DNA from: Diadema antillarum
Taxonomy: Eukaryota
DNA length: 64,000 nt
Reading direction: 5' to 3'
Assembly: GCF_040938485.1 (NCBI RefSeq)
Contig: NW_027272094.1
Location: forward strand, 744,001-808,000
Part shown: piece by piece, positions 21,201-34,757 of the stretch
How the letters are laid out: each line of letters starts with the position of its first letter
How positions within the stretch are numbered: position 1 is the stretch's first letter
Made by a program: the position numbers and the translations under genes
Notes under the pieces: generated by a model
What the model was told of the DNA's origin: nothing
Seen by the model: the letters and a program-made list of their open reading frames with translations, nothing else
The model's database searches: none

Positions 21201-24200
21201 GGTGATGGAACGAATCGAAATAAATATGAAAAGTATTATCCTTCTGCTGCTCTTTCAGAGTATCTGATAATAATGATTAAGCGGAGTTTATGAAAAACTG
21301 AGATCTGTTCAAAAAATCTTGGATCTCGTGACATCTCAACGAATTATCAGGAGAAAGGATAGGTGTGGATAGAATATCACCACATCTATTGGCGAATATT
21401 GAATCCGATTTCCTTCCCACCAAGAAATAAACAATTGAGTATATGAATATAAGAACGACCCAAGTCCATGGAAGACCATTAATATAAGATTTAACTCAGT
21501 CATTTCAGGCACTTCCGGAGGTAATTAGGATTTATCATTTATACACAAGATGAGTCCATGCATAAGCTACAATTTCCCGTGTCAAACTGAATTTGGCCAA
21601 AATATTGGACTTGGGTCGTTCTTATATTCAGGTCTTCAATTATGATTATCAAGCGTGCCTGATCTAACTTCAAGGAAATTAAGACATTTCCTTGCGATTT
21701 CCGTTACATATCACAATCGCAATAACTGAGATGAGATTTTTTTTTTTCCTGCGACATTTTGCCCACAGTTCCGAGCGAGCGTCATATCATATTCAAGGAG
21801 CGTTCGTCGGGAGCGTACCGGCTGTCCGCCTATTTCCTTTCGAAGATCATCAGCGGTTTCCCGCTCAAAGTGATCATGCCTGCTGTTTCGGTCACCCTGG
21901 CATTTTGGCTGGTTGGACTCCACATGTCGGTGGTGGCGTACCTCTGTTTCTTAGCTACCGTGGTGATCGCTGTGCAAGTCGGTCAGGTCAGCATTATTAA
22001 AGTTAATTAAAAAGCCTCTTCAAGGGGAAATCCAGGCCAGATTTACTCTTTAAGTTAGTCCGATAAGAAAGAGTAAAAACACAACAGTGAGAATTTGATC
22101 AAAATCGGATGAAAAGTAAGGGAGTTATGAAAAAATGTCAAAGATTTGCTAATTTTAGTATAACCGTTCTAAAGCAGTTGATATATCAATATGTAAATGA
22201 GTGAGCTGATGATCTCATCATATTACAAGTTTCCACTGATCATGTTAAAAAAATGACGAAGATTCAGGTTTTCGGATATAAAAGTTTAAAACATAATATC
22301 ATACCTGATTGAATAACTTCAAAATAATGGGTAGTCAGATATATCAACATTTGAGACAGGGGCGTAATTGTGTTTGATTAAAAAAAGAATCCACCATTTC
22401 ATAACTTCCTTTAATAAAGTTCATCCAGTTTTGATCAAACTTTCACTTTTGCGCTTGAAAGATTCACTTTACTCTTTCTTTTATATTTTCGTTAACTTTT
22501 ATTTGTCAAAGATTTTACCTTTAAAGTTCTCGCACCTGTATAAGAGATATGAAGATTTTAATCGCAAAACGAGGTAACTCCGTTCGTGTTAATTTTAGAT
22601 TTCTGTAATTAAAGCTGTCATAAAAACGAAAATGATAAATAAGTATGGGATGTTTTTAATCGTCCAGAAGTTCAAGTATTCTGTCTTGTGTAACAGATGA
22701 GGCATTGCTGCAAGGGTTTTTGCACTCTCCAATGAGCATATTTAAAATGTGGTGTTCAACCCATTTTGCAGTTAAGGGCTTCATATAATGATTTTTGTAG
22801 AACATAAGGATGCATTGATATTTCTTATGCAACCAATTGTACAGCTCTTGCACTTCGAACAATTCAAGATGATTGATTGATGATGGTGGTGTTGATGATG
22901 ATGATGATGATTACGATGATGATGATATTGTTGATGATTATGTTGACGTCAGTATTATCACTGATTATGATGATGATGACGTTGATCAATGATCGTTATC
23001 ATTGATGATGTTGGTGATTACGGTCGAGAATGAATCTCGTCCACTCCAGGGAATAGGTCTGCTGATCAGCGCATCCGCCTCATCCACCCACCAAGCCCTT
23101 GTGGTGTCCAGCCTCGCCATGCTCACCGCGATGCTCCTCGGCGGGTTTTACGTGGAGATGCTGCCTAGCACCCTTCGGTGGCTGCCCTACACCAGTTTCA
23201 CGTCCTATGTTTACGGCGCCTTTCTGTCAGCCGTCTTCGTTGTCGTGCCTCAACCCATAAGGTACACATCAGGGCTGGCGGAGCGTTTTCAAAAGTGGGG
23301 GGGGGGGGCACTTCCGGGTTTGATGAGCTAACAAGCTTCCACTTCCTTCTTTTTTCGGTTCAAGTTCAAGTTCAAGTTCATATTTATTCGTTTTTTCCAC
23401 AATACATAACACAAACATAAATCTCACTTTCTTAAGTGACAAAATCAATGCATACAATTGTACAGAGAAAACAACAATAATAGCACAAAAAAACCTAACA
23501 GTATCGATACATTGCAATAGTTGCTAAGACAACGAAAGTGAAATAGTTTTCAATACAATTATGCACTGTGTGAAAAAAACGGAGGGACCCACTACAAGCA
23601 AAAAATAAAAAATAAATAAAAAATGAATAAAACTAAGTCTTCAGCTCATCTTCCTCCTTTCTCTTCCTGGTTTCTTCAGCTGCCAAGCAAACAAGCAAAA
23701 AAAAAAAATCTTCAGCGGAAAAACATAACCTTACCGCGATCACACATCAAGATCTCTTATCTATTTCTTTCTAGTGCCACTTACGTACTTCCTGGTAAAA
23801 AAAAAAAATGGTGGAAAGTGGGGGTGTGGGACAGAGTGATGACACCAATATGTATTCCTTTGTATGGTGCACAAAAAGTGTGGGGGCCCGAGTCCCCACG
23901 CCCCCCCCCCCCCCCCCCTTCGGTCCCGCCCCCCCCCCCCCCCCTTCGGTCCGCCGTCCATGCACAATCAAATAAAGCAGTTAGGGCAAGATACTGTATT
24001 AGAATGAGCAGTGGCTCGATGGTCCGGGGCCACTCGAAATTAATGTTGGGCTACCTAGAAAAAAAAAATAGGTGGCCTGATTGGGCGCTTAAAGTAAAAA
24101 ATGATTTGTTATGTTTTTTTAAATTTCATTTCGGGCCAGAACGTTTCACTTTTGCCTCCAAATTTCAGATTAAAGGAAACCAGAGCCCAGACATAAATTT

Positions 24201-25214
24201 TGATTGAGTGAAAGCGAAGGTATTGGTAGAGCACATGAGTAAAAGTTTGAGGAAAATCGGCAATCCATTATTTTTAGAGTTATAAATTCTTTAAGTTTCT
24301 GTGCAGCTGTCGCTGAATGAAAAGACTACTACACTTTGTGACGTCAGTATGTACAACGATATCAAGAAAATATAAAGAGAAATCAACAAAATTCAAATTC
24401 TTCAATGAAAAACACACATTTTCTTGACCAAAGTTACCGACCCATATTATCAAGGATAATAGTGTTCCCTCTGCTCTGTGACAGAGGTAACTTAAGCGCT
24501 CTTTCATTTTGCTAGAAACGTGAAAATAATGTTGAAACCTGTTTATATTTTATCTATATTATTATATCTTTACCTTATCTCTCTCCCTCCATCTCCCTCT
24601 CCTGCTCTCTTTATCTCTGACGTTTGTATTTTGCATCGTTCCTTTCTTTTCATTTCTCTCAAGTCTGCTCCAAGCAGTGCCAGTAACATCACAACAAGGA
24701 AACAGAAAAACGCCATTTTTTTCTCAAGGAAAGCAACATGGCAAAAAATGAAACTAGCTATATAGGCAACAATATGATTGTCGTTCTGTTAATAAAAGTT
24801 TAGTATTCATGTATACTAGTCAATCACTCGTCTCATTTCTTTTATTATTTCATTCTTTCGTTCTTTACTTATTCATTCATTAATATTTAATTTATTGTGT
24901 TAATTATTTCATTCATGTATTCTTCATTCATTTTACGCAGATGTAGTACGACAGGTGTATCCGACTTTGCGGAATGCATGGTCACGTCTGCTTTCACGAA
25001 CAGCAGTGATGGAGCGGCTAATGTCAGTGCGCTGACCAACTCAACGATGTCGCCGGAGTTTCGGCAGAGCTTCATGAGCAGTGCCGCTTTGGTCGACAGT
25101 CTGACCATCGTGTCACTACCTATTTGGGGGTACTATGCCGCGTTAGGAGGGTTTATTGTCGTGGTCTACACCCTTTCCTATCTTGTCCTGAGATTTGGCC
25201 GCAAACCAAACTGA
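282..25214 (+). CDS. ABCG-family half-transporter (NBD-TMD order), 5'-truncated by the window edge; 10 exons, 1842 nt, 613 aa + stop
   Basis: Exons 282-387, 1583-1683, 3620-3781, 11210-11303, 15022-15186, 16495-16946, 18944-19001, 21769-21986, 23050-23261 and 24941-25214 join in frame with AG/GT boundaries. They encode ABC signature LSGGEKKR, Walker B/D-loop [14 protein letters not shown]-loop SIHQP, the ABCG motif YNPADF and an ABC2-type membrane domain ([16 protein letters not shown]; LLGGFY). Walker A lies upstream of the window. The exact paralogue cannot be assigned by eye. Confidence 0.95.
990..1400 (+). repeat. Old interspersed repeat, homologous to ~14215-14580
   Basis: Shared blocks aatttg(c/t)agtgatt, aatgaacaagga(t/c)gatgaca, gttaagcaagt, tgttcagtgta, tctgctcaaggat, taatttccacaaatct in the same order. 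Confidence 0.65.
1583..1683 (+). CDS. ABCG exon (signature motif and Walker B: [33 protein letters not shown])
   Basis: ttgcag acceptor, gtgagt donor; not shown in the ORF track. Confidence 0.95.
2644..3025. mobile_element. Palindromic MITE with TTAA flanks and AGGG...CCCT ends (Kolobok-like, non-autonomous)
   Basis: TTAA|AGGGAT...ATCCCT|TTAA; mirrored arms around the central hairpin AATAAAGTGTGGGACCCACACTTTATT. The superfamily call rests on TTAA TSD + RR termini. Confidence 0.75.
3155..3422. repeat. (TA)n followed by an (ATC/ATT)n microsatellite region
   Basis: Pure (TA)n at 3155-3212; imperfect trinucleotide repeat at ~3265-3422. Confidence 0.95.
3620..3781 (+). CDS. ABCG exon (EPTSGLDS...SIHQPSS...LLLLSEGQ)
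   Basis: acatag acceptor, gtgagt donor, 54 codons; D-loop and H-loop. Confidence 0.95.
3785..3834. repeat. (GT)n microsatellite directly after an ABCG donor site
   Basis: gtgtgtgt tract continuing from gtgagt. Confidence 0.9.
4775..5091. mobile_element. Second, internally deleted copy of the 2644-3025 MITE family
   Basis: TTAA|AGGGGTGATACAGTTT...GCCCT|TTAA; shares tttatttgatgaaaattgg...gagatatccaaaa. Further fragments near 10920-11130, 12020-12080 and 31400-31480. Confidence 0.7.
5926..8761. mobile_element. Foldback-type non-autonomous DNA transposon (about 2.8 kb) with long modular TIRs and piggyBac-like ends
   Basis: TTAA|CCTGGACATTTT at left and AAAATGTCCAGG|TTGAA at right. Arms of about 0.8 kb are reverse complements, each built of 4-5 subrepeats of about 161-168 bp. 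No transposase ORF in the ~1.2-kb middle. Confidence 0.85.
8767..9485. mobile_element. piggyBac-like MITE
   Basis: TIR CCCTAACTAGGCC...GGCCTAGTTAGGG followed by TTAA (9486-9489). Confidence 0.8.
11210..11303 (+). CDS. ABCG exon (TVYFGEA...[12 protein letters not shown])
   Basis: tcacag acceptor, gtaagt donor; NPADF motif. Confidence 0.93.
11357..11492 (+). repeat. Exact 68-bp tandem duplication
   Basis: gtctctaattcagg...gttgaacaagaa occurs twice, identical (11357-11424, 11425-11492). Confidence 0.95.
11672..11995 (-). mobile_element. 3' remnant of an L2/CR1-group LINE
   Basis: The minus strand reads [13 protein letters not shown] then, after a frameshift, [21 protein letters not shown], resembling the L2 ORF2 C-terminus (GDRAFS.AAP.LWN.LP...FK..L). 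It ends in an (ATT)n-like tail. Confidence 0.7.
14215..14580 (+). repeat. Old interspersed repeat, homologous to ~990-1400
   Basis: Same collinear blocks as the 990-1400 copy, clearly diverged. Confidence 0.65.
15022..15186 (+). CDS. ABCG exon (NBD-TMD linker)
   Basis: ctttag acceptor; weak gtagtt donor chosen because it gives phase 1 matching the next exon. Confidence 0.75.
15241..15370. mobile_element. Small (~130 bp) palindromic MITE
   Basis: gggttt..catcaacttttgtcagc / gctgacaaacgttgatgaaaccc inverted ends; internal gtcagcgctgac palindromes. Confidence 0.65.
16495..16946 (+). CDS. ABCG exon (linker and TM1: [15 protein letters not shown]...[14 protein letters not shown])
   Basis: cgtcag acceptor (phase 1), gtaaag donor (phase 0). 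Confidence 0.88.
18168..18214. repeat. (AC)n microsatellite
   Basis: direct reading. Confidence 0.95.
18944..19001 (+). CDS. ABCG exon (TM2: [19 protein letters not shown])
   Basis: long pyrimidine tract + caccag acceptor, gtaagt donor. Confidence 0.9.
20405..20495 (+). mobile_element. 5'-truncated 3' tail of the same SINE family
   Basis: tggaccccgtggaagaccagct...gaata..ggctatccagccatcttctcaga matches 62065-62135. Confidence 0.7.
21444..21632. mobile_element. MITE with 25-bp perfect TIR
   Basis: TGAATATAAGAACGACCCAAGTCCA (21444-21468) / TGGACTTGGGTCGTTCTTATATTCA (21606-21630). Confidence 0.75.
21769..21986 (+). CDS. ABCG exon ([26 protein letters not shown]...TM3-4)
   Basis: ccacag acceptor, gtcagc donor; conserved ERxxGxY motif. 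Confidence 0.93.
22023..22520. mobile_element. Probable Kolobok-like MITE
   Basis: TTCA|AGGGGAAAT...TTACCT|TTAA ends; internal mirrored gatcaaaatcggatgaa / ttcatccagttttgatc. Confidence 0.45.
22868..23010. repeat. Imperfect (GAT)n microsatellite upstream of an ABCG acceptor
   Basis: direct reading. Confidence 0.85.
23050..23261 (+). CDS. ABCG exon (TM5: GIGLLISA...[22 protein letters not shown])
   Basis: ctccag acceptor, gtacac donor, phase 2. Confidence 0.9.
24941..25214 (+). CDS. ABCG terminal exon (extracellular loop with 2 Cys and NxS/T sites, TM6, stop)
   Basis: acgcag acceptor, phase 2; ends ...[14 protein letters not shown]. Confidence 0.9.
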
Positions 25215-28941: not shown

Positions 28942-29120
28942 GGGCCGAATTCACGAAGGTGGTACAAATTTATTGAAACCATGGTTTAAACCATGGACAA
29001 AAACAGTAGTTTTGTATGGTTCGCTAAGTGTCGCCTAGCCCATTTCATTACGAAATCAGGCATTTCGTCGACGAAATGATCATTTCGTAACGAAATGAAC
29101 ATTTCGTCGACGAGATGAGA
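28942..29120 (+). repeat. Half copy of the 52135-52460 palindromic MITE family
   Basis: ggccgaattcacgaaggtggtacaaat...aaaccatggtttaaaccatggacaaaaac followed by cattt(c)gtcgacgaaatga subrepeats. Confidence 0.7.
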
Positions 29121-29656
29121 AATGACTGTATACTTTCTGAAGGAGTTGGCAAGGAGATTACCGGTGCGATGCAATACTGAGTGACTACTGTAACTATTTT
29201 GATGTCTTGCTCTTCTATTGATGCTTATATTTTCAGTCCTGTTTTTGATCGATTGGAATTCTCTGTCATAATTTTATTTCGACCGAATAGATTCAAATGG
29301 GTTATTTAGTTTAAGTAACCATGTCGTGAAGCCATGTTGCAGTTAGCGAATGATTGATCATTCTGCAATGGTCTATATACTCTTCTTAGACTGCACCTAG
29401 TTTGCACTTATGTAGTGACATTTTCAGACAAATGTGTAGTATTGACAGACCTAACACTCTGATACTACGTAAATTTGATATTCCTCAAGAATGGGACAAA
29501 TGACGGATTTTGACCGATTGCACTCGTAAACGGGTTCAAGTGGTACGTACAAATTAGCCCCTTCTTCCCAGGTAAGGGTCCTTTAAAAGGGGGTCCAAGT
29601 GAACATCTACTTCAGATATAGGTGGGGCTTGCACCAGGGTCGCTCATTCCGCTGCC

Positions 29657-30214
29657 ATGGCAGGCCAGAGGGGGTCTCGGCGCGTCTTCGCGCCTCTGCT
29701 CGCCCTCATCGTTCTGGTGGGGTTCTCTTCTCGGGCAGCTGTTCGCGCTAACGAAGTTGTAGAGCTACCCGACGAGTATCCGGCGTATGGCGCCGAGGAA
29801 CTCGAGGCAGTACCAGAAGAGGCAGCAGTGGACAACGACATCTACGCTTACGGCCAGGATGGAGGTGACGGCGTTGTCGACTCAAGGGCTGATGAAGAGT
29901 ATGATGCCAGAGATGATGAATACGGTTACGACGACGATACTCTTGAAGAAAGAGACGATGACGATGGCAACTTCCGGCAGATGTATGACGATACGTTCGT
30001 GGTCGAGGAAGAGGAAAGAGATTACCAGGAAGACAGAGACGGCTATGATGACCAGGAGATCGACTACCATCACGGTATCGGCTACGACAGATTTCGAGCC
30101 TCGTATGAGTCCATGGAGGAAGAACGTGAGCTAAATGATGACGTAGGGGATAATTATGACCTCGAATACGATGCCGGAGAGGGACTCCAGGTCGATGCCG
30201 ATGATGTGGGACAG
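29657..30214 (+). CDS. Uncharacterised secreted protein, exon 1: signal peptide + Asp/Glu/Tyr-rich acidic domain
   Basis: ATG at 29657; basic n-region, hydrophobic core VFAPLLALIVLVGF and AVRA|N cleavage-like site; 186 open codons with GC-rich coding composition; cag|gtaatt donor, phase 0. Confidence 0.88.
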
Positions 30215-31606
30215 GTAATTTTGAATTATAATTTCCTGTTTGCTTTCTTTCCCTTAACTTATTTTTTTTTTTTCTAGCATCCGAGACCAATACAGGACTC
30301 AGCTGATACGTCACTTTGGAAAAGGCCATTAGATTGCTTGTGAAATCGTATGCATTTCAGTAGAAATAATGTTGTAACCTGATGGTGTATGATTTTTTTT
30401 TGGGGGGGGGGGGGGTGGGGGGCGGGGAGGGGGTTTAATTAGAAACAATCTGGCCTCATGAAACTTTTGAATAAGAAATGTAAAAGGAACACAAATCAGA
30501 AATTTTGCTTAGAAAGCAGGTCGGAACTGTAATATTCAATACAACCCGAGATTGGTATGTGTGAGAGTTAGAGCATGATGCAAGTTACTTGTTATATTTG
30601 TTGATGTTTTTGTTGTGACAGTGCATGTTATTATTTGAATGTATTTTTTCCCGTGAAATGTGATTTTAAACCTAAATTCATGAGTTCAGTAACTTTGTTA
30701 CTGGAATTTATAACTCAAGTAGTGATTCTCTTTTCCATTCAGAATCTCAACTCAGTAGTTAAATACCACGGAATATCGTAAAGTGTAACTAAAATGTATC
30801 GTGCTAGACCCGAATATTCATGCCTTACATGCCTTAGTGCATTTGCATCGAAACAAATCTTAGAGTACGTTTTTTGTTTGTTTGTTGTTGTTGTCATTTT
30901 TTTTTTCCTTCGGAAACCCAATTACTCACTATGAAGTTATCTTATGCTGTCAAGAATTAATGTCAATGTATTATTAAACTTTTTTTGGGGGGGGGTGGGG
31001 GTGGGATGGGGACTATTTTGGTCCAGCTTCACCATAGTCCATGGTGATAAGTAGTGTATCGGAGCCAATCTGAGACTTCTTTATTTGTGTTTATGCCTTT
31101 ATTTTGTGCTTGAATGTTGTACAACAGTTATTGAGCAAAATTTCTATGAAAGACAAAAATACACAAAAGAGTCTACCTCCCACCTACCATATTTCACGGT
31201 TTCTTGTATAGAAAGTGTCGAAATGTATACCGATAGAAACGTCTTTATTTTGCGTTTGTTCTTTGTATTCCTTGCCATAATCTTATGACAGTGATCATGG
31301 TTGTTACCTAATGATCTCAGCTAAAATAGGCAAATAATGCGATGCTTTTGCATGTGCATCAAAAGCAGATTTGACAAGAGATCCCTAGCAGTGATATATT
31401 GATGAAGACTGGTTTTGAAGTAGCTGAGATATTAAAACAAAGGAAGTGGTCCTAATGATAGGTAGGTCCCGCGTTTAAGTAGCATCTCTACCAAAAACTG
31501 TACCATCCCTGTGATCTTTATAATAGTGTTTGTTGAGTGTTTGTACTATACAACTTGTACGATATCATTAAATGGAATTGGTCTACGCTTCTTTTCTCCC
31601 TTCAAG

Positions 31607-32845
31607 GGTCTTGAGATGAAAGAAGCGGAAGTCGAATCTATGGATGCAATAGTGCGAGAACTGGAACTCTTTTCCCGAGGATGCAAAAGCGGCAATTGTG
31701 GTCGACGCACTGGAAGCAGAGGAAAAGGGTCTGGAGGAGGCGAGGCGGTGGTGGTGGAGGAGGCGGCGGTGGTGGAGGTGGCCGGTGGTGGACGGGGTCC
31801 TTGCAATGGAAATAATAGAGGAGGGGGTGGAGGTGGCGGAGGAGGAGGCGGTGGCGGAGGGGGGAGGTGGTGGTGGAGGAGGAGGTGGAGGGTACAAACC
31901 GCGTCCACAGCCTGGAGGGGGAGGAGGAGGAAGGAGGGGGAGGAGGTGGAGGAGGATGGGGTGGAGAGGAGGATGGGGCGGGGGTGGAGGTGGGGGAGAG
32001 GAGGAGGAGGATGAGGTATAAACCCAAGCCAAAACCAGGCCAAAGCTAGACCAGGCAACGGAGGAGGCGGAGGTGGTGTGGTGGAGGTGGTGGTGGAGGA
32101 GGAGGTGGTGGAGGAGGAGGATGGGCGGAGGGGGAGGATGGGGCGGAGGTGGAGGTGGAGGTGGTGGAGGCGGAGGAGGGGGAAACAAACCTAAGCCAAA
32201 ACCCATGCCAAAACCTAGACCAGGAAACGGAGGTGGAGGTGGTGGTGGTGGAGGTGGAGGCGGTGGTGGTGGTGGTGGTGTGTGGAGGCGGTGGTGGTGG
32301 TGGGGTGGAGGCGGTGGTGGTGGTGGTGGAGGCGGCGGAGGGGGTAAACCGCGTCCCCCTCCAAGACCAAAACCACGACCCCCTCCAAGGCCCAAACCAC
32401 AACCCCCGGTCAGACCACCAAGCCTGCCCCTAAACCACGACCCCCTCCAAGGCCCAAACCACAACCCCCGGTCAGACCACCAAGCCCAAAACCCCCTGCC
32501 CCTCCTCCCTCTCCCAAACCAGGCCCCGCCCCACGGCCACCCTGGTGGCACTGGAGTGACAGCAGTAGCGGCAGCAGTAGCGGCAGCAGTAGCTCTGGCA
32601 GCCGTAGTGGTAAACACAGCAAGGGCAGCAAAAGCAAGGGCAGCAAAAGCAAGGGCAGCAAAAGCAAAGGGAAACATAGTCACGGCAGCAAGAGCAAAGG
32701 AAAGCATAGTCACGGGAGCAAAAGCAAAGGAAAGCATAGTCACGGGAGCAAAAGTAAGAGCAGAGGTCGAAGCCGGGAGTTCAATCTGCAAGGAGAGATG
32801 GGGCATGACCTCTTGCAGAAATGGGCAGATATGACTCTCCCTTAG
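31607..32845 (+). CDS. Uncharacterised secreted protein, exon 2: Gly-rich / Lys-Pro / Ser / Lys-His-Ser-Gly repeat blocks (interrupted by multiple 1-bp indels in this sequence)
   Basis: Pyrimidine tract + ttcaag acceptor, phase 0, reading GLEMKEAEVESMDAIVRELELFSRGCKSGNCGRR. Gly codon runs (GGA/GGT/GGC) and KP motifs hop between frames. The last segment (32420-32845) reads KPAPKPRPPP...WWHWSDSSSGSSSG...KGSKSKGKHSHGSKS...KWADMTLP-TAG. Confidence 0.75.
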
Positions 32846-34757
32846 AGGATGTTTTATGTGAGGTGGTAGTGCGGTGACAGGACGAACAATGTCATCCAAA
32901 GTTACCCATGTTTGTTCATACAGTATATTGCTCACTTTAGGCCGATTTTCCAGGATTTCAAATAATTATGGTACCTTTATAATAATTGACTTGGGCTTCA
33001 CGCATAATTATTCTTTGCCGAGTAATCATTCAGCCACTTCGCAAATGAGTTCTCGTTAGGGTTAAGGCAGCACATGTCGATATCAAGCTATACTTGATAC
33101 TCGGTATTGCAATTTCCCCGGCAGCTTTATTTAGTAGTTTGCTCCACTCGTTGAAACAGCAGAATAGCGAGAAGTTCGACATCGTAGTTCTATCGCTGCA
33201 CACTCTAAAAGCAGACAGGAGGGAAAAAATGAAAAGGAAAAAAAAATGATTTAAAGAAAAAAATCGGTGATAGGTCAAGCGTTGGTTGTTACTGCATTAG
33301 TACGAATAAAAAAAAAATAATAAAAATAATAATTATGTTGGCTTTTTTCAGTGTAGCCCAAAATTCTGTTATGATTGTAGCAATTTTCAGGCACATGTAG
33401 CGAAAGATGATTTGCATGGCTTCTTTTCCTTCTATTACTGTGTATTTTTATGTCACCCAAGAAATCTTCTGCAAAATAAATACATCACAATGGAAATCTC
33501 AAAGCATCTCAAAGTGTCTTCATTAATCTGTCGAGTCATAGATTTGCCATGTAGTTACTATCTTTAGCTATGCATAAATGAACACCGCAACCCTGACGAA
33601 TTTTAAAGACGGCAAATGACAAGAGTGTGGAGAATGGTGCGTTATGTGATGAGGTTTCTAACAACTTCGATACGGACATTCCTGGATGATATCTACAAAT
33701 CGGTTAGTTGTTGCAACGATCGACATCGTGATGATTGAGAAAATTACATAATATACTTGTATACGTAATACAGTATCGGTTTATAGAGGATGCCTATTTC
33801 AAAATATGATTCATGTTAGCACATATTGTAACCAAATACTAAGTCGATAACGACCGACTCTTAATTTCGATGAGTCAGCAAAATACACCCGACAGCTATC
33901 TGCAGTTATAAGGGGTGGGTGGGGGGCACAACCCCAATGGCTCCCCCCCCCCCCCCCCCCCAAACACACACACGCACATACACCTACACGATCCTGGCTT
34001 CAAAACACAAACAAGAAATCCGCCCAGGATTCCGTCAAATTCCTGTGAATAAAAGAATGTATTTCAACACTTAAGCCAAGGTAGCTACTGAATTATAATC
34101 CCGTATCATAAAAGGGGTTTTTCAGACCCACGTGCTCATTGATATATAAAATTTTGAAAGAAATGCCACAGGAATACTGATACACTTACATGGTGATAAA
34201 AATGTTATTCACTTGTTTTTTTCAGTGCACGGAATTCAAGTTACACATACGACACAAATTTAATGTATTTTTTGGTTTGTTCCATGTCCTCGTTCAACCG
34301 TGAATTGACACAAGTGTTAACATCGTATAATGAGCTTTCTAAAACATAAATTCGATGTCTTGAATTAAATTTAGCACGGAAAAATGACAAAACTGCAGTG
34401 TTTGCAATTTCTACCACGTGGGCACACAACCGTGAAATTTTGCCAACAAATCATATGACATGATAGGAAGCACATAAGTTGTATGTTGCCTGCCTTCTTC
34501 TGCTGGAAATGTGGAATTTATTCTGACATCATTAATAAAAGTTACGAAATTGAGTTGTGAACTTCAAAAAGTGACCATTTTGTCTTTAGAGAAATGCTCA
34601 CTGAAGCATGACCGTTTGATATGTGCTGAATATCACTTGAAAGGAAGCTAAGAACAGCTACATGCCTCTGTATTCAGATTTTGTCAAAGTTTCCGTATCT
34701 AGAAATTAGAGTGATTAGCTTTAGGGGGAACTTATTCTTTGTTTAGAGTATATCATT

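What the first reader, a model, noticed from the sequence alone, without database searches (positions are those of the whole stretch)
29657..32845. Orphan secreted block-copolymer protein: acidic N-half, Gly/Lys-Pro middle, Ser then Lys/His/Ser basic tail (candidate adhesive or biomineral-matrix precursor)
Seen in sequence: a spliceable two-exon gene between the ABCG and PI3K genes. It encodes a signal peptide, a 155-aa block with 60 Asp/Glu, 15 Tyr and no Lys or Cys (hand count), then ELELFSR-GCKSGNCGRR. Poly-Gly runs with Trp alternate with YKPRPQP, YKPKPKP and NKPKPKPMPKPRPGN, followed by a Pro/Arg/Lys block, WWHW, SDSSSGSSSGSSSSGS, and KGSKS x3 / KHSHGSKSKG x3. Established knowledge: oppositely charged low-complexity blocks with Gly/Tyr/Lys and Ser runs characterise underwater cements (sandcastle-worm Pc proteins, mussel foot proteins with YK motifs), mollusc shell framework proteins (KRMP, shematrin) and the diatom silaffin precursor (signal + acidic domain + Ser/Lys repeats). 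Inference: this is a polyampholyte structural precursor that may self-coacervate or cross-link via Tyr/Lys in tube-foot adhesive, tooth/spine matrix or egg coat. I recognise no named echinoderm family with this architecture.
Basis: partly seen in the sequence, partly recalled or inferred. Interest (0 to 1): 0.85.

Follow-up and report, generated by a model that had tools for sequence, protein, structure and literature searches.

The report
Broken-frame secreted low-complexity protein gene

Summary
Exon 1 (29657-30214) is as described: good start context, signal peptide, then 155 residues with 60 Asp/Glu, 15 Tyr, no Lys or Cys. The splice donor and acceptor are good.

Exon 2 (31607-32845) is not one ORF. 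The quoted motifs lie in three different frames. Read as assembled, translation stops at TGA 32012, giving 321 aa. The stitched protein of about 600 aa needs at least six uncompensated frame changes.

The locus still shows protein-level constraint. All five variable columns in the KGKHSHGSKS repeats fall at third codon positions of one frame. Most differences between the Lys-Pro units are synonymous in another frame. These two frames join exactly once a 10-nt gap in a perfect 72-nt tandem copy is allowed for.

No homologue, Pfam family or RNA evidence could be obtained, and a control showed that two of the blank searches have little power.

Verdict: a real, lineage-restricted gene for a secreted low-complexity polyampholyte. 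Its Gly-rich tract is either mis-assembled or recently disrupted. The adhesive or biomineral reading rests on composition alone. It is a new member of a known kind, of modest interest.

The parts
29582..29589 (+). TATA-like TTTAAAAG, 75 nt upstream of the ATG
   Evidence: Pattern scan. Position fits a promoter, but function is not shown.
29657..29749 (+). Start codon (GCCATGG) and predicted signal peptide, residues 1-31
   Evidence: Basic n-region, hydrophobic core FAPLLALIVLVGF (mean hydropathy up to 2.99), AVRA|N. Judged by rule; no SignalP was available.
29750..30214 (+). Acidic Asp/Glu/Tyr block: 155 aa, net charge -51, no Lys or Cys. Tyr residues are flanked by acidic residues.
   Evidence: Counts. 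No Pfam family. No phmmer hit in 1.84 billion representatives.
30215..31606 (+). Phase-0 intron, 1392 nt, GT..AG, containing imperfect poly-G tracts
   Evidence: Donor CAG|GTAATT and acceptor ttcttttctcccttcaag|G. No transcript evidence was available.
31607..31741 (+). Unique start of exon 2 (frame mod3=2). It holds an acidic helix-like stretch, a Cys-x4-Cys loop and Gly-Arg-Arg (GCKSGNCGRR at 31679-31708), the only clean dibasic site in unique sequence.
   Evidence: Translation; dibasic scan.
31742..31864 (+). Continuation in frame 2: EAVVVEEAAVVEVA, then GGGRGPCNGNNR and poly-Gly. EAVVVEEAAVVEVA is 13 Gly codons read out of phase between two compensating shifts.
   Evidence: Phase map, junction contexts, coordinates.
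31865..32123 (+). Scrambled Gly/Trp/Lys-Pro tract. Gly-codon phase runs 0, 1, 0, 2, then YKPKPKP in frame 1, AKARPGN-poly-Gly in frame 2, and poly-Gly in frame 1. It contains TGA 32012-32014, which ends the as-assembled product at 321 aa.
   Evidence: Shift sites are G6 at 31859-31864, the extra A at 31932, cca/ccc near 32037, GGTGTGG at 32077-32079 and G3 versus G4 at 32121-32124.
32124..32431 (+). Frame-0 piece of 102 codons: poly-Gly with Trp, NKPKPKPMPKPRPGN, VWRRWWWW (a compensated excursion) and the 24-nt KPRPPPRP units
   Evidence: For the KP units, differing codons are 9 synonymous to 4 non-synonymous in frame 0, against 0-1 synonymous in the other + frames.
32370..32503 (+). Perfect tandem copy of a 72-nt (24-codon) Pro/Lys/Arg unit whose first copy lacks 10 nt (CAAAACCCCC). 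This single event accounts for the frame 0 to frame 2 switch.
   Evidence: TRF reports period 62 at 100% identity.
32432..32845 (+). Frame-2 tail of 137 codons plus stop. It holds a Pro/Lys block, WWHW (32543-32554), a Ser run (32555-32602), KGSKS x3 (32621-32665), KGKHSHGSKS x3 (32666-32755), the unique end REFNLQGEMGHDLLQKWADMTLP (32774-32842) and TAG 32843-32845.
   Evidence: All 5 variable columns of the 30-nt units are third positions of frame 2, giving 10 synonymous and 0 non-synonymous codon differences. The only other frame with that property contains a stop.
33305..33324 (+). First AATAAA signals, about 460 nt after the stop
   Evidence: Pattern scan. Use is not shown.
31583..32935 (-). 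Antisense ORF of 450 codons (Pro-rich), judged a by-product of the G-rich composition
   Evidence: ORF list. Repeat differences are non-synonymous in the open antisense frames.

Best explanation
This is a real, lineage-restricted gene of a Diadema-like sea urchin for a secreted, intrinsically disordered polyampholyte.

Its layout is: signal peptide; an Asp/Glu/Tyr pro-domain (net charge -51); an intron; a short unique segment with a Cys-x4-Cys loop and a Gly-Arg-Arg site; then a basic half. The basic half is made of poly-Gly/Trp runs, Lys-Pro modules, a Pro/Lys/Arg block, a Ser run and Lys/His/Ser repeats.

The 600-nt G-rich part of exon 2 is not in one frame in the assembled sequence. I judge this most likely (about 50%) a consensus or polishing artefact in a hard-to-sequence, probably heterozygous (GGN)n tract, with the gene intact in the animal.

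Inferred mechanism, not shown: the acidic half neutralises the basic half during secretion. A furin-type convertase could separate the two at CGRR|T. The halves could then act as an extracellular matrix, cement or mineral-associated material through charge-driven association.
For: Shown:
- Clean 186-codon exon 1 with a start context, a signal-peptide-like N-terminus and extreme composition.
- Strong donor and acceptor. Only the frame that continues exon 1 is open at the start of exon 2.
- Repeat differences are synonymous only in one open frame: tail 10:0, with 5 of 5 variable columns at codon position 3; KP units 9:4.
- The two constrained frames are joined by one event, a 10-nt gap in a perfect 72-nt in-frame duplicate.
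- All frame damage is confined to 31859-32431, the G-rich and repeat tract. The unique parts (558 + 135 + about 410 nt) are undamaged.
- Five of the six uncompensated shifts are 1-nt length changes in short runs.
- Neighbouring ABCG and PI3K exons read cleanly.
- Net frame change over the exon is zero.

Context: secreted, disordered, repetitive, lineage-specific proteins are a recognised class in biomineral matrices (PMC2614417, PMC4336488, PMC4897951).
Against: - No transcript, read or orthologue evidence was obtained.
- The public Diadema assemblies I checked in two papers (D. antillarum, and the ERGA D. setosum assembly) are HiFi/hifiasm based. One reports QV 44.5. Five or more indel errors in 600 nt would be an extraordinary local error rate, unless polishing or patching damaged the tract. 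I could not establish which assembly the window comes from.
- A 10-nt gap is not a typical base-calling error.
- The function rests on composition alone.
Confidence: 0.5

Rival explanations
1. The frame changes are real. The assembled copy is a recently inactivated allele or young pseudogene of such a gene. It can only make a 321-aa product: signal, acidic block, unique segment, then out-of-phase Gly-tract residues ending at TGA 32012.
For: There are stops in all three frames and about 11 phase changes. HiFi-based assemblies have low error rates. The 10-nt gap and the GA or GT dinucleotide shifts are not classic homopolymer errors. No expression evidence was found.
Against: The damage is confined to the one tract that is hardest to sequence. 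There is no nonsense or frame damage in about 1.1 kb of unique coding sequence. Repeat differences are still purely synonymous in the tail. Six independent recent 1-nt indels with no other decay is an odd mutational spectrum, because trinucleotide tracts usually slip by whole units.
Confidence: 0.3
2. The gene structure differs from the reader's. Either further small introns inside 'exon 2' skip the out-of-frame parts, or the true product is the short 321-aa protein and the downstream repeats are 3' UTR.
For: 75 frame-preserving GT..AG pairs exist between 31700-32011 and 32347-32560. One acceptor-like site at 32522 has a strong pyrimidine tract.
Against: All candidate donors are weak (GAG|GTGG type, at most 6 of 9 consensus positions). 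Gly runs continue straight across the shift sites. The KP units and tail that would be skipped or left untranslated show synonymous-only variation.
Confidence: 0.1
3. Functional rival: the gene encodes a host-defence precursor. An anionic pro-piece masks a cationic Gly-rich, Pro/Arg/Lys-rich and His-rich C-terminal polypeptide, which is released at the GRR site. This is the layout of many antimicrobial-peptide precursors.
For: The layout is signal, then a -51 pro-domain, then a single dibasic site CGRR, then a basic half with net charge of about +45. The KPRPPPRPKPRPPPRP stretch resembles the PRP motifs of proline-rich antimicrobial peptides, and KHSHG repeats resemble His-rich cationic peptides. 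Both resemblances are from my own knowledge and were not tested.
Against: A basic part of about 400 aa with no further dibasic sites is far larger than known peptides. There is no homology to any family. No immune expression data exist.
Confidence: 0.15
4. There is no gene here: the ORFs and motifs are chance products of low-complexity DNA.
For: G-rich and GA-rich DNA gives long ORFs on both strands, for example the 450-codon antisense ORF and the 193-codon antisense ORF of exon 1. Nothing was found in any database.
Against: A signal peptide, a good start context and matched splice sites in the right phase occur together. Variable repeat columns are confined to third codon positions in the only open frame (5 of 5, roughly 1% by chance).
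Confidence: 0.05

Closest known systems
Repetitive low-complexity secreted matrix proteins of echinoderm and mollusc biominerals, e.g. the sea-urchin tooth proteins with alternating Ala/Pro-rich basic and acidic Gly-rich motifs (PMC2614417); the class is reviewed in PMC4897951 and PMC4336488
   Same: Signal peptide, predicted disorder, alternating acidic and basic low-complexity blocks, Gly/Pro richness, lineage restriction, no recognisable domains.
   Different: No sequence similarity was shown. There is no Kazal domain and no C-type lectin domain. The charge is segregated into two halves rather than alternating. It has poly-Gly/Trp runs and a Lys/His/Ser tail. There is no proteomic or expression link to any skeleton.
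Diatom silaffin precursor (Sil1p)
   Same: Signal, then an acidic region, then Ser/Lys-rich repeats (KGSKS compared with SGSKGSK). This is a composition-level likeness recalled from knowledge.
   Different: No RR[IL/NL]-type unit boundaries, no homology, and an organism that does not make silica. The tail units here also carry His.
Marine cement proteins (sandcastle-worm Pc proteins, mussel foot proteins) and mollusc KRMP/shematrin
   Same: Oppositely charged low-complexity material; Gly-rich runs broken by aromatic residues; Lys-rich basic parts.
   Different: Tyr is almost entirely in the acidic half (15 of 17), not paired with Lys or Gly in the basic half. Trp rather than Tyr breaks the Gly runs. 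Both charges sit on one chain. No homology.
P0001, an unnamed 229-aa product on an ENA contig of unknown eukaryotic origin (L001 8001-8690)
   Same: The tail has the same order of motifs: a Ser/Gly run, then GSKS[RK]G repeats, then KHSHG repeats. BLASTP gives 69% identity over 52 aa.
   Different: The rest is an unrelated Gly-rich globular-looking domain. There is no acidic block and no DNA-level similarity. Paralogues on the same contig lack the tail. The match is low-complexity, with E = 5e-3 database-wide.

Membership tests
Sea-urchin spicule matrix (SM) proteins | C-type lectin-like domain (called mandatory in PMC2614417) | tested here: not met
   Pfam scans of exon 1, the exon 2 start, the frame-0 piece and the tail found no domain.
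Silaffin precursor (Sil1p) | Tandem Lys/Ser units each ending in an RRIL/RRNL processing motif | tested here: not met
   No RR[IN]L in any + frame of 29001-33500. The motif was recalled from knowledge.
Silaffin precursor (Sil1p) | Polyamine-modified Lys and phospho-Ser | not testable with these tools
   Needs mass spectrometry of the native protein.
Mussel/sandcastle-worm cement proteins | Tyr (DOPA) embedded in basic Gly/Lys repeats | tested here: not met
   15 of 17 Tyr lie in the Lys-free acidic block. The basic half has only the two Tyr of YKPRPQP and YKPKPKP.
Mussel/sandcastle-worm cement proteins | Expression in an adhesive gland and presence in the secreted cement | not testable with these tools
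   No RNA run could be listed.
Sperm bindin | Conserved core with the LRHLRHH-type motif | tested here: not met
   No match in + frames. The single antisense match is unrelated. The motif was recalled from knowledge.
SpTransformer (185/333) | Short leader-only exon 1; exon 2 with a Gly-rich region, RGD and a His-rich region | tested here: not met
   Exon 1 here is 186 codons with a 155-aa acidic block. There is no RGD in any frame. No direct sequence comparison was made because no reference sequence was in hand.
Proline-rich antimicrobial peptide precursors | Short (under 60 aa) mature PRP-motif peptide released from an anionic pro-piece | tested here: inconclusive
   An anionic pro-piece, a single GRR site and PRP motifs are present. 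However, the basic part is about 400 aa with no further dibasic sites.
   There are stops in all three frames of exon 2, and the as-assembled product ends at 32012.

The most novel reading that the evidence does not exclude
The gene is intact in the animal and encodes a previously undescribed type of echinoid extracellular material. It would be a single-chain, charge-segregated precursor: a Tyr-rich polyanion, a convertase site, then a poly-Gly/Trp, Lys-Pro and Lys/His/Ser polycation. After cleavage, the two halves would self-coacervate into cement or mineral-associated matrix.

A still more exotic variant (a few per cent at most) is that the frame changes are real and that slippage in the (GGN)n tract yields alternative C-termini. 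Frames 0 and 2 both stay open through the tail and stop 11 nt apart.
Probability: 0.12. Interest if true: 0.6.

Novelty: new member of a known kind. Interest (0 to 1): 0.3.

Why it matters
If the gene is intact and expressed, it would add a strongly charge-segregated, Tyr-rich acidic and Gly/Trp/Lys-Pro basic protein to the short list of echinoderm secreted low-complexity proteins. That would give a candidate for spine, tooth or tube-foot material in a diadematoid urchin.

The more immediate value is cautionary. The protein as described was assembled from three reading frames. Any downstream use (annotation, synthesis, proteomic database entry) must first settle the true sequence of the G-rich tract.

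The locus is also a compact example of how synonymous-only variation among repeats can identify the true frames of a low-complexity exon when the assembly breaks them.

Tried and rejected
**Reads and transcripts**
- RNA runs: none was listed for 29600-32900. The single search was then spent, so read laying could not be used. Neither the splice junction nor the indels could be checked against reads.

**Homology searches**
- phmmer of exon 1 against 1.84 billion representatives: 0 hits.
- Word-indexed search with the tail: one low-complexity hit, P0001.
- Word-indexed search with the Gly/Lys-Pro piece: none.
- Control with a genuine ABCG exon from the same window: also none. The length-limited searches therefore say little, and 'orphan' rests mainly.
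- Exact look-up of the exon 1 read-through ORF: not on record.
- Back-translated anchors in JGI metagenomes: 0 and 0.
- ESM Atlas features for exon 1: best score 0.73, far below the informative range. Only a flavour of acidic secreted phosphoproteins, which I discarded as evidence.

**Family and element scans**
- Pfam on five pieces: nothing above noise.
- Rfam: 0.
- Paralogues within the window: none.

**Alternative gene models**
- Internal introns to rescue the frame: only weak donors, and they would remove regions under codon-level constraint. Rejected as the main explanation.
- Antisense 450-codon ORF as the real gene: rejected.
- Bindin, SpTransformer and SM-protein membership: rejected.

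**Assembly source**
- I could not determine which Diadema assembly the window comes from, so the assembly-quality argument is indirect.
Full report
**What the sequence shows: exon 1 and the intron**

An ATG at 29657 sits in GCCATGG, preceded by an in-frame stop and by a TATA-like TTTAAAAG 75 nt upstream.
- The first 31 residues have a basic start, a 13-residue hydrophobic core and AVRA|N, so they look like a signal peptide by rule. No SignalP was available.
- The next 155 residues contain 34 Asp, 26 Glu, 15 Tyr, 9 Arg and no Lys or Cys, giving net charge -51. Most Tyr residues are flanked by acidic residues. From general knowledge that is the usual context of tyrosine sulfation; this was not tested.
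- The ORF meets a good donor (CAG|GTAATT, 30214/30215). After 1392 nt there is a pyrimidine tract and caag|G (31606/31607).
- Exon 1 is 558 nt, so the intron is phase 0. Only the matching frame (positions with mod3 = 2) is open at the start of exon 2.

Exon 2 (31607-32845) is not an open reading frame.
- Frame 2 has stops at 32012, 32192, 32216 and 32345. Frame 0 has stops at 32019 and 32832. Frame 1 has many stops.
  - Frame 2: GCKSGNCGRR, WWHW, the Ser run, KGSKS x3, KGKHSHGSKS x3 and the unique C-terminus.
  - Frame 0: YKPRPQP, NKPKPKPMPKPRPGN and the first KPRPPPRP block.
  - Frame 1: YKPKPKP.
- I mapped the phase of non-G bases in the (GGN)n runs. The Gly-codon phase runs 2, 1, 2, 0, 1, 0, 2, 1, 0, 1, 0 and finally 2.
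- Some of these excursions are locally compensated:
  - 31742-31783 reads EAVVVEEAAVVEVA in frame 2.
  - 32280-32303 reads VWRRWWWW in frame 0.
- About six shifts are uncompensated: G6 at 31859-31864, an extra A at 31932, cca for ccc near 32037, GGTGTGG at 32077-32079, G3 for G4 at 32121-32124, and the event at 32424-32431.
- Read as assembled, the spliced product is 321 aa and ends at TGA 32012, upstream of every Lys-Pro, Ser and Lys/His block.

- The three 30-nt tail units differ at five columns. All five are third positions of frame 2, giving 10 synonymous and 0 non-synonymous codon differences. The other open frames give 0 synonymous. The one antisense frame with the same property contains a stop.
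- The three 24-nt KPRPPPRP units give 9 synonymous to 4 non-synonymous in frame 0, against 0-1 synonymous in the other + frames. All four differences between units 1 and 2 are synonymous.
- These two constrained frames are disconnected in the assembly. TRF reports a perfect 62-nt period at 32370-32486.
- Alignment shows a perfect tandem copy of a 72-nt (24-codon) unit whose first copy lacks 10 nt, CAAAACCCCC. That single event converts frame 0 to frame 2.
The as-assembled 321-aa product is not the form that selection acted on.

**Artefact or real disruption?**

I could not test this directly. No RNA run was listed, and that used the only run search.

For an artefact:
- All damage lies in the 600-nt G-rich and repeat tract.
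- About 1.1 kb of unique coding sequence is untouched.
- Most shifts are 1-nt run-length changes.
- The net shift is zero.
- The ordinary exons next door read cleanly. The ABC2_membrane profile runs over positions 2-57, 71-144 and 146-211 across three exons, and the PI3K C2, PIK and kinase exons are clean.

For real disruption:
- Another agent called this genome Diadema-like; I did not check that.
- The two Diadema genome papers I read (D. antillarum, and the ERGA D. setosum assembly) describe HiFi/hifiasm assemblies. One reports QV 44.5. That same assembly was ONT-patched from other individuals and Racon-polished with about 9x Illumina, which could damage such a tract.
- A 10-nt gap is not a typical base-calling error.

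My estimates are roughly 50% artefact with an intact gene, 30% recently broken allele or pseudogene, and 10% a different exon structure. The last is weakened because the candidate internal donors are poor and would remove constrained sequence.

**Relatives**

- Pfam finds nothing in any piece.
- phmmer of exon 1 against 1.84 billion cluster representatives finds nothing.
- The tail search finds one protein, P0001, on an ENA contig of unknown eukaryotic origin. Its C-terminus has the same order of motifs: a Ser/Gly run, GSKS[RK]G repeats, then KHSHG repeats. BLASTP gives 69% identity over 52 aa.
- The rest of P0001 is an unrelated Gly-rich domain. Paralogues on the same contig lack the tail, and there is no DNA similarity to the window.
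- The Gly/Lys-Pro piece finds nothing.
- A control with a genuine ABCG exon also finds nothing. The length-limited searches therefore have little power here, and 'orphan' is only moderately supported.
- Metagenome scans with back-translated anchors, the exact look-up and Rfam were all blank.
- There is no paralogue in the window.

**Function**

Nothing beyond composition is available.
- The in-phase pieces total about 596 residues, with 28% Gly, 10% Pro and 8% Ser.
- The N-half has net charge -51. The pieces after the GRR site are basic, with pI 10-12 and net charge of about +45.
- The only clean dibasic site in unique sequence is CGRR|T at the boundary between the two halves.

My working model is a secreted precursor whose acidic half masks the basic half until a convertase cuts at GRR. 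The halves would then act as extracellular matrix, cement or mineral-associated material. This is inference. A host-defence precursor with the same logic is a fair rival.

- There are no silaffin unit boundaries.
- Tyr is not in the basic half.
- There is no C-type lectin domain.
- There is no bindin core and no RGD.

**Novelty and verdict**

Secreted, disordered, repetitive, lineage-specific proteins are a well-described class in echinoderm and mollusc matrices (PMC2614417, PMC4336488, PMC4897951). This would be a new member of a known kind.

The key correction is that the described protein exists only after frame stitching. Interest is modest (0.3) until reads or cDNA fix the sequence.

Noticed in passing
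L001 7372-8690 (ENA contig ERZ25069853:ctg27157l): An unnamed eukaryotic gene encodes a Gly-rich, apparently globular domain (GGxGG-type motifs, conserved Cys). One paralogue (P0001/P0002, 229 aa) carries a Ser/Lys/His tail much like the one here, while shorter paralogues on the same contigs (P0003/P0004, 122 aa) lack it. The tail may be a mobile low-complexity module. The source organism is unknown.
   Followed up: partly
window 31583-32935, minus strand: A 450-codon antisense ORF runs through the whole of exon 2, and a 193-codon antisense ORF lies over exon 1 (29748-30329). Both look like by-products of the G-rich and GA-rich composition, but ORF-based gene callers would pick them up.
   Followed up: yes
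window 32022-32842: Frames 0 and 2 are both open across the whole tail and stop 11 nt apart (32832 and 32843). In frame 0 the Lys/Ser repeats read AAKARAAKARAAKAKG, which is Ala/Lys-rich. Codon-level variation supports frame 2 only.
   Followed up: yes
window 23623-24207, plus strand: A 194-codon ATG-started ORF with a [17 protein letters not shown] stretch lies in the ABCG intron between the exons at 23002-23331 and 24897-25214. It has no Pfam match and is probably non-coding.
   Followed up: partly
window 30402-30433 and 30975-31010: There are imperfect poly-G tracts inside the intron (G15 T G6 C G4 A G5, and a second shorter one). They show that G-rich sequence is a local feature of the locus, not only of the exon.
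   Followed up: no
The ABCG transporter's last exon ends at 25214 on the plus strand. A class I-type PI3K (C2, PIK and kinase domain exons) lies on the minus strand, so it converges tail-to-tail with this gene. About 11 kb (33.3-44.7 kb) between them holds no recognised gene.
   Followed up: partly
window 3133-3212: A dinucleotide microsatellite here also matches several places in the unrelated contig L001. It was the only DNA similarity between the two.
   Followed up: no
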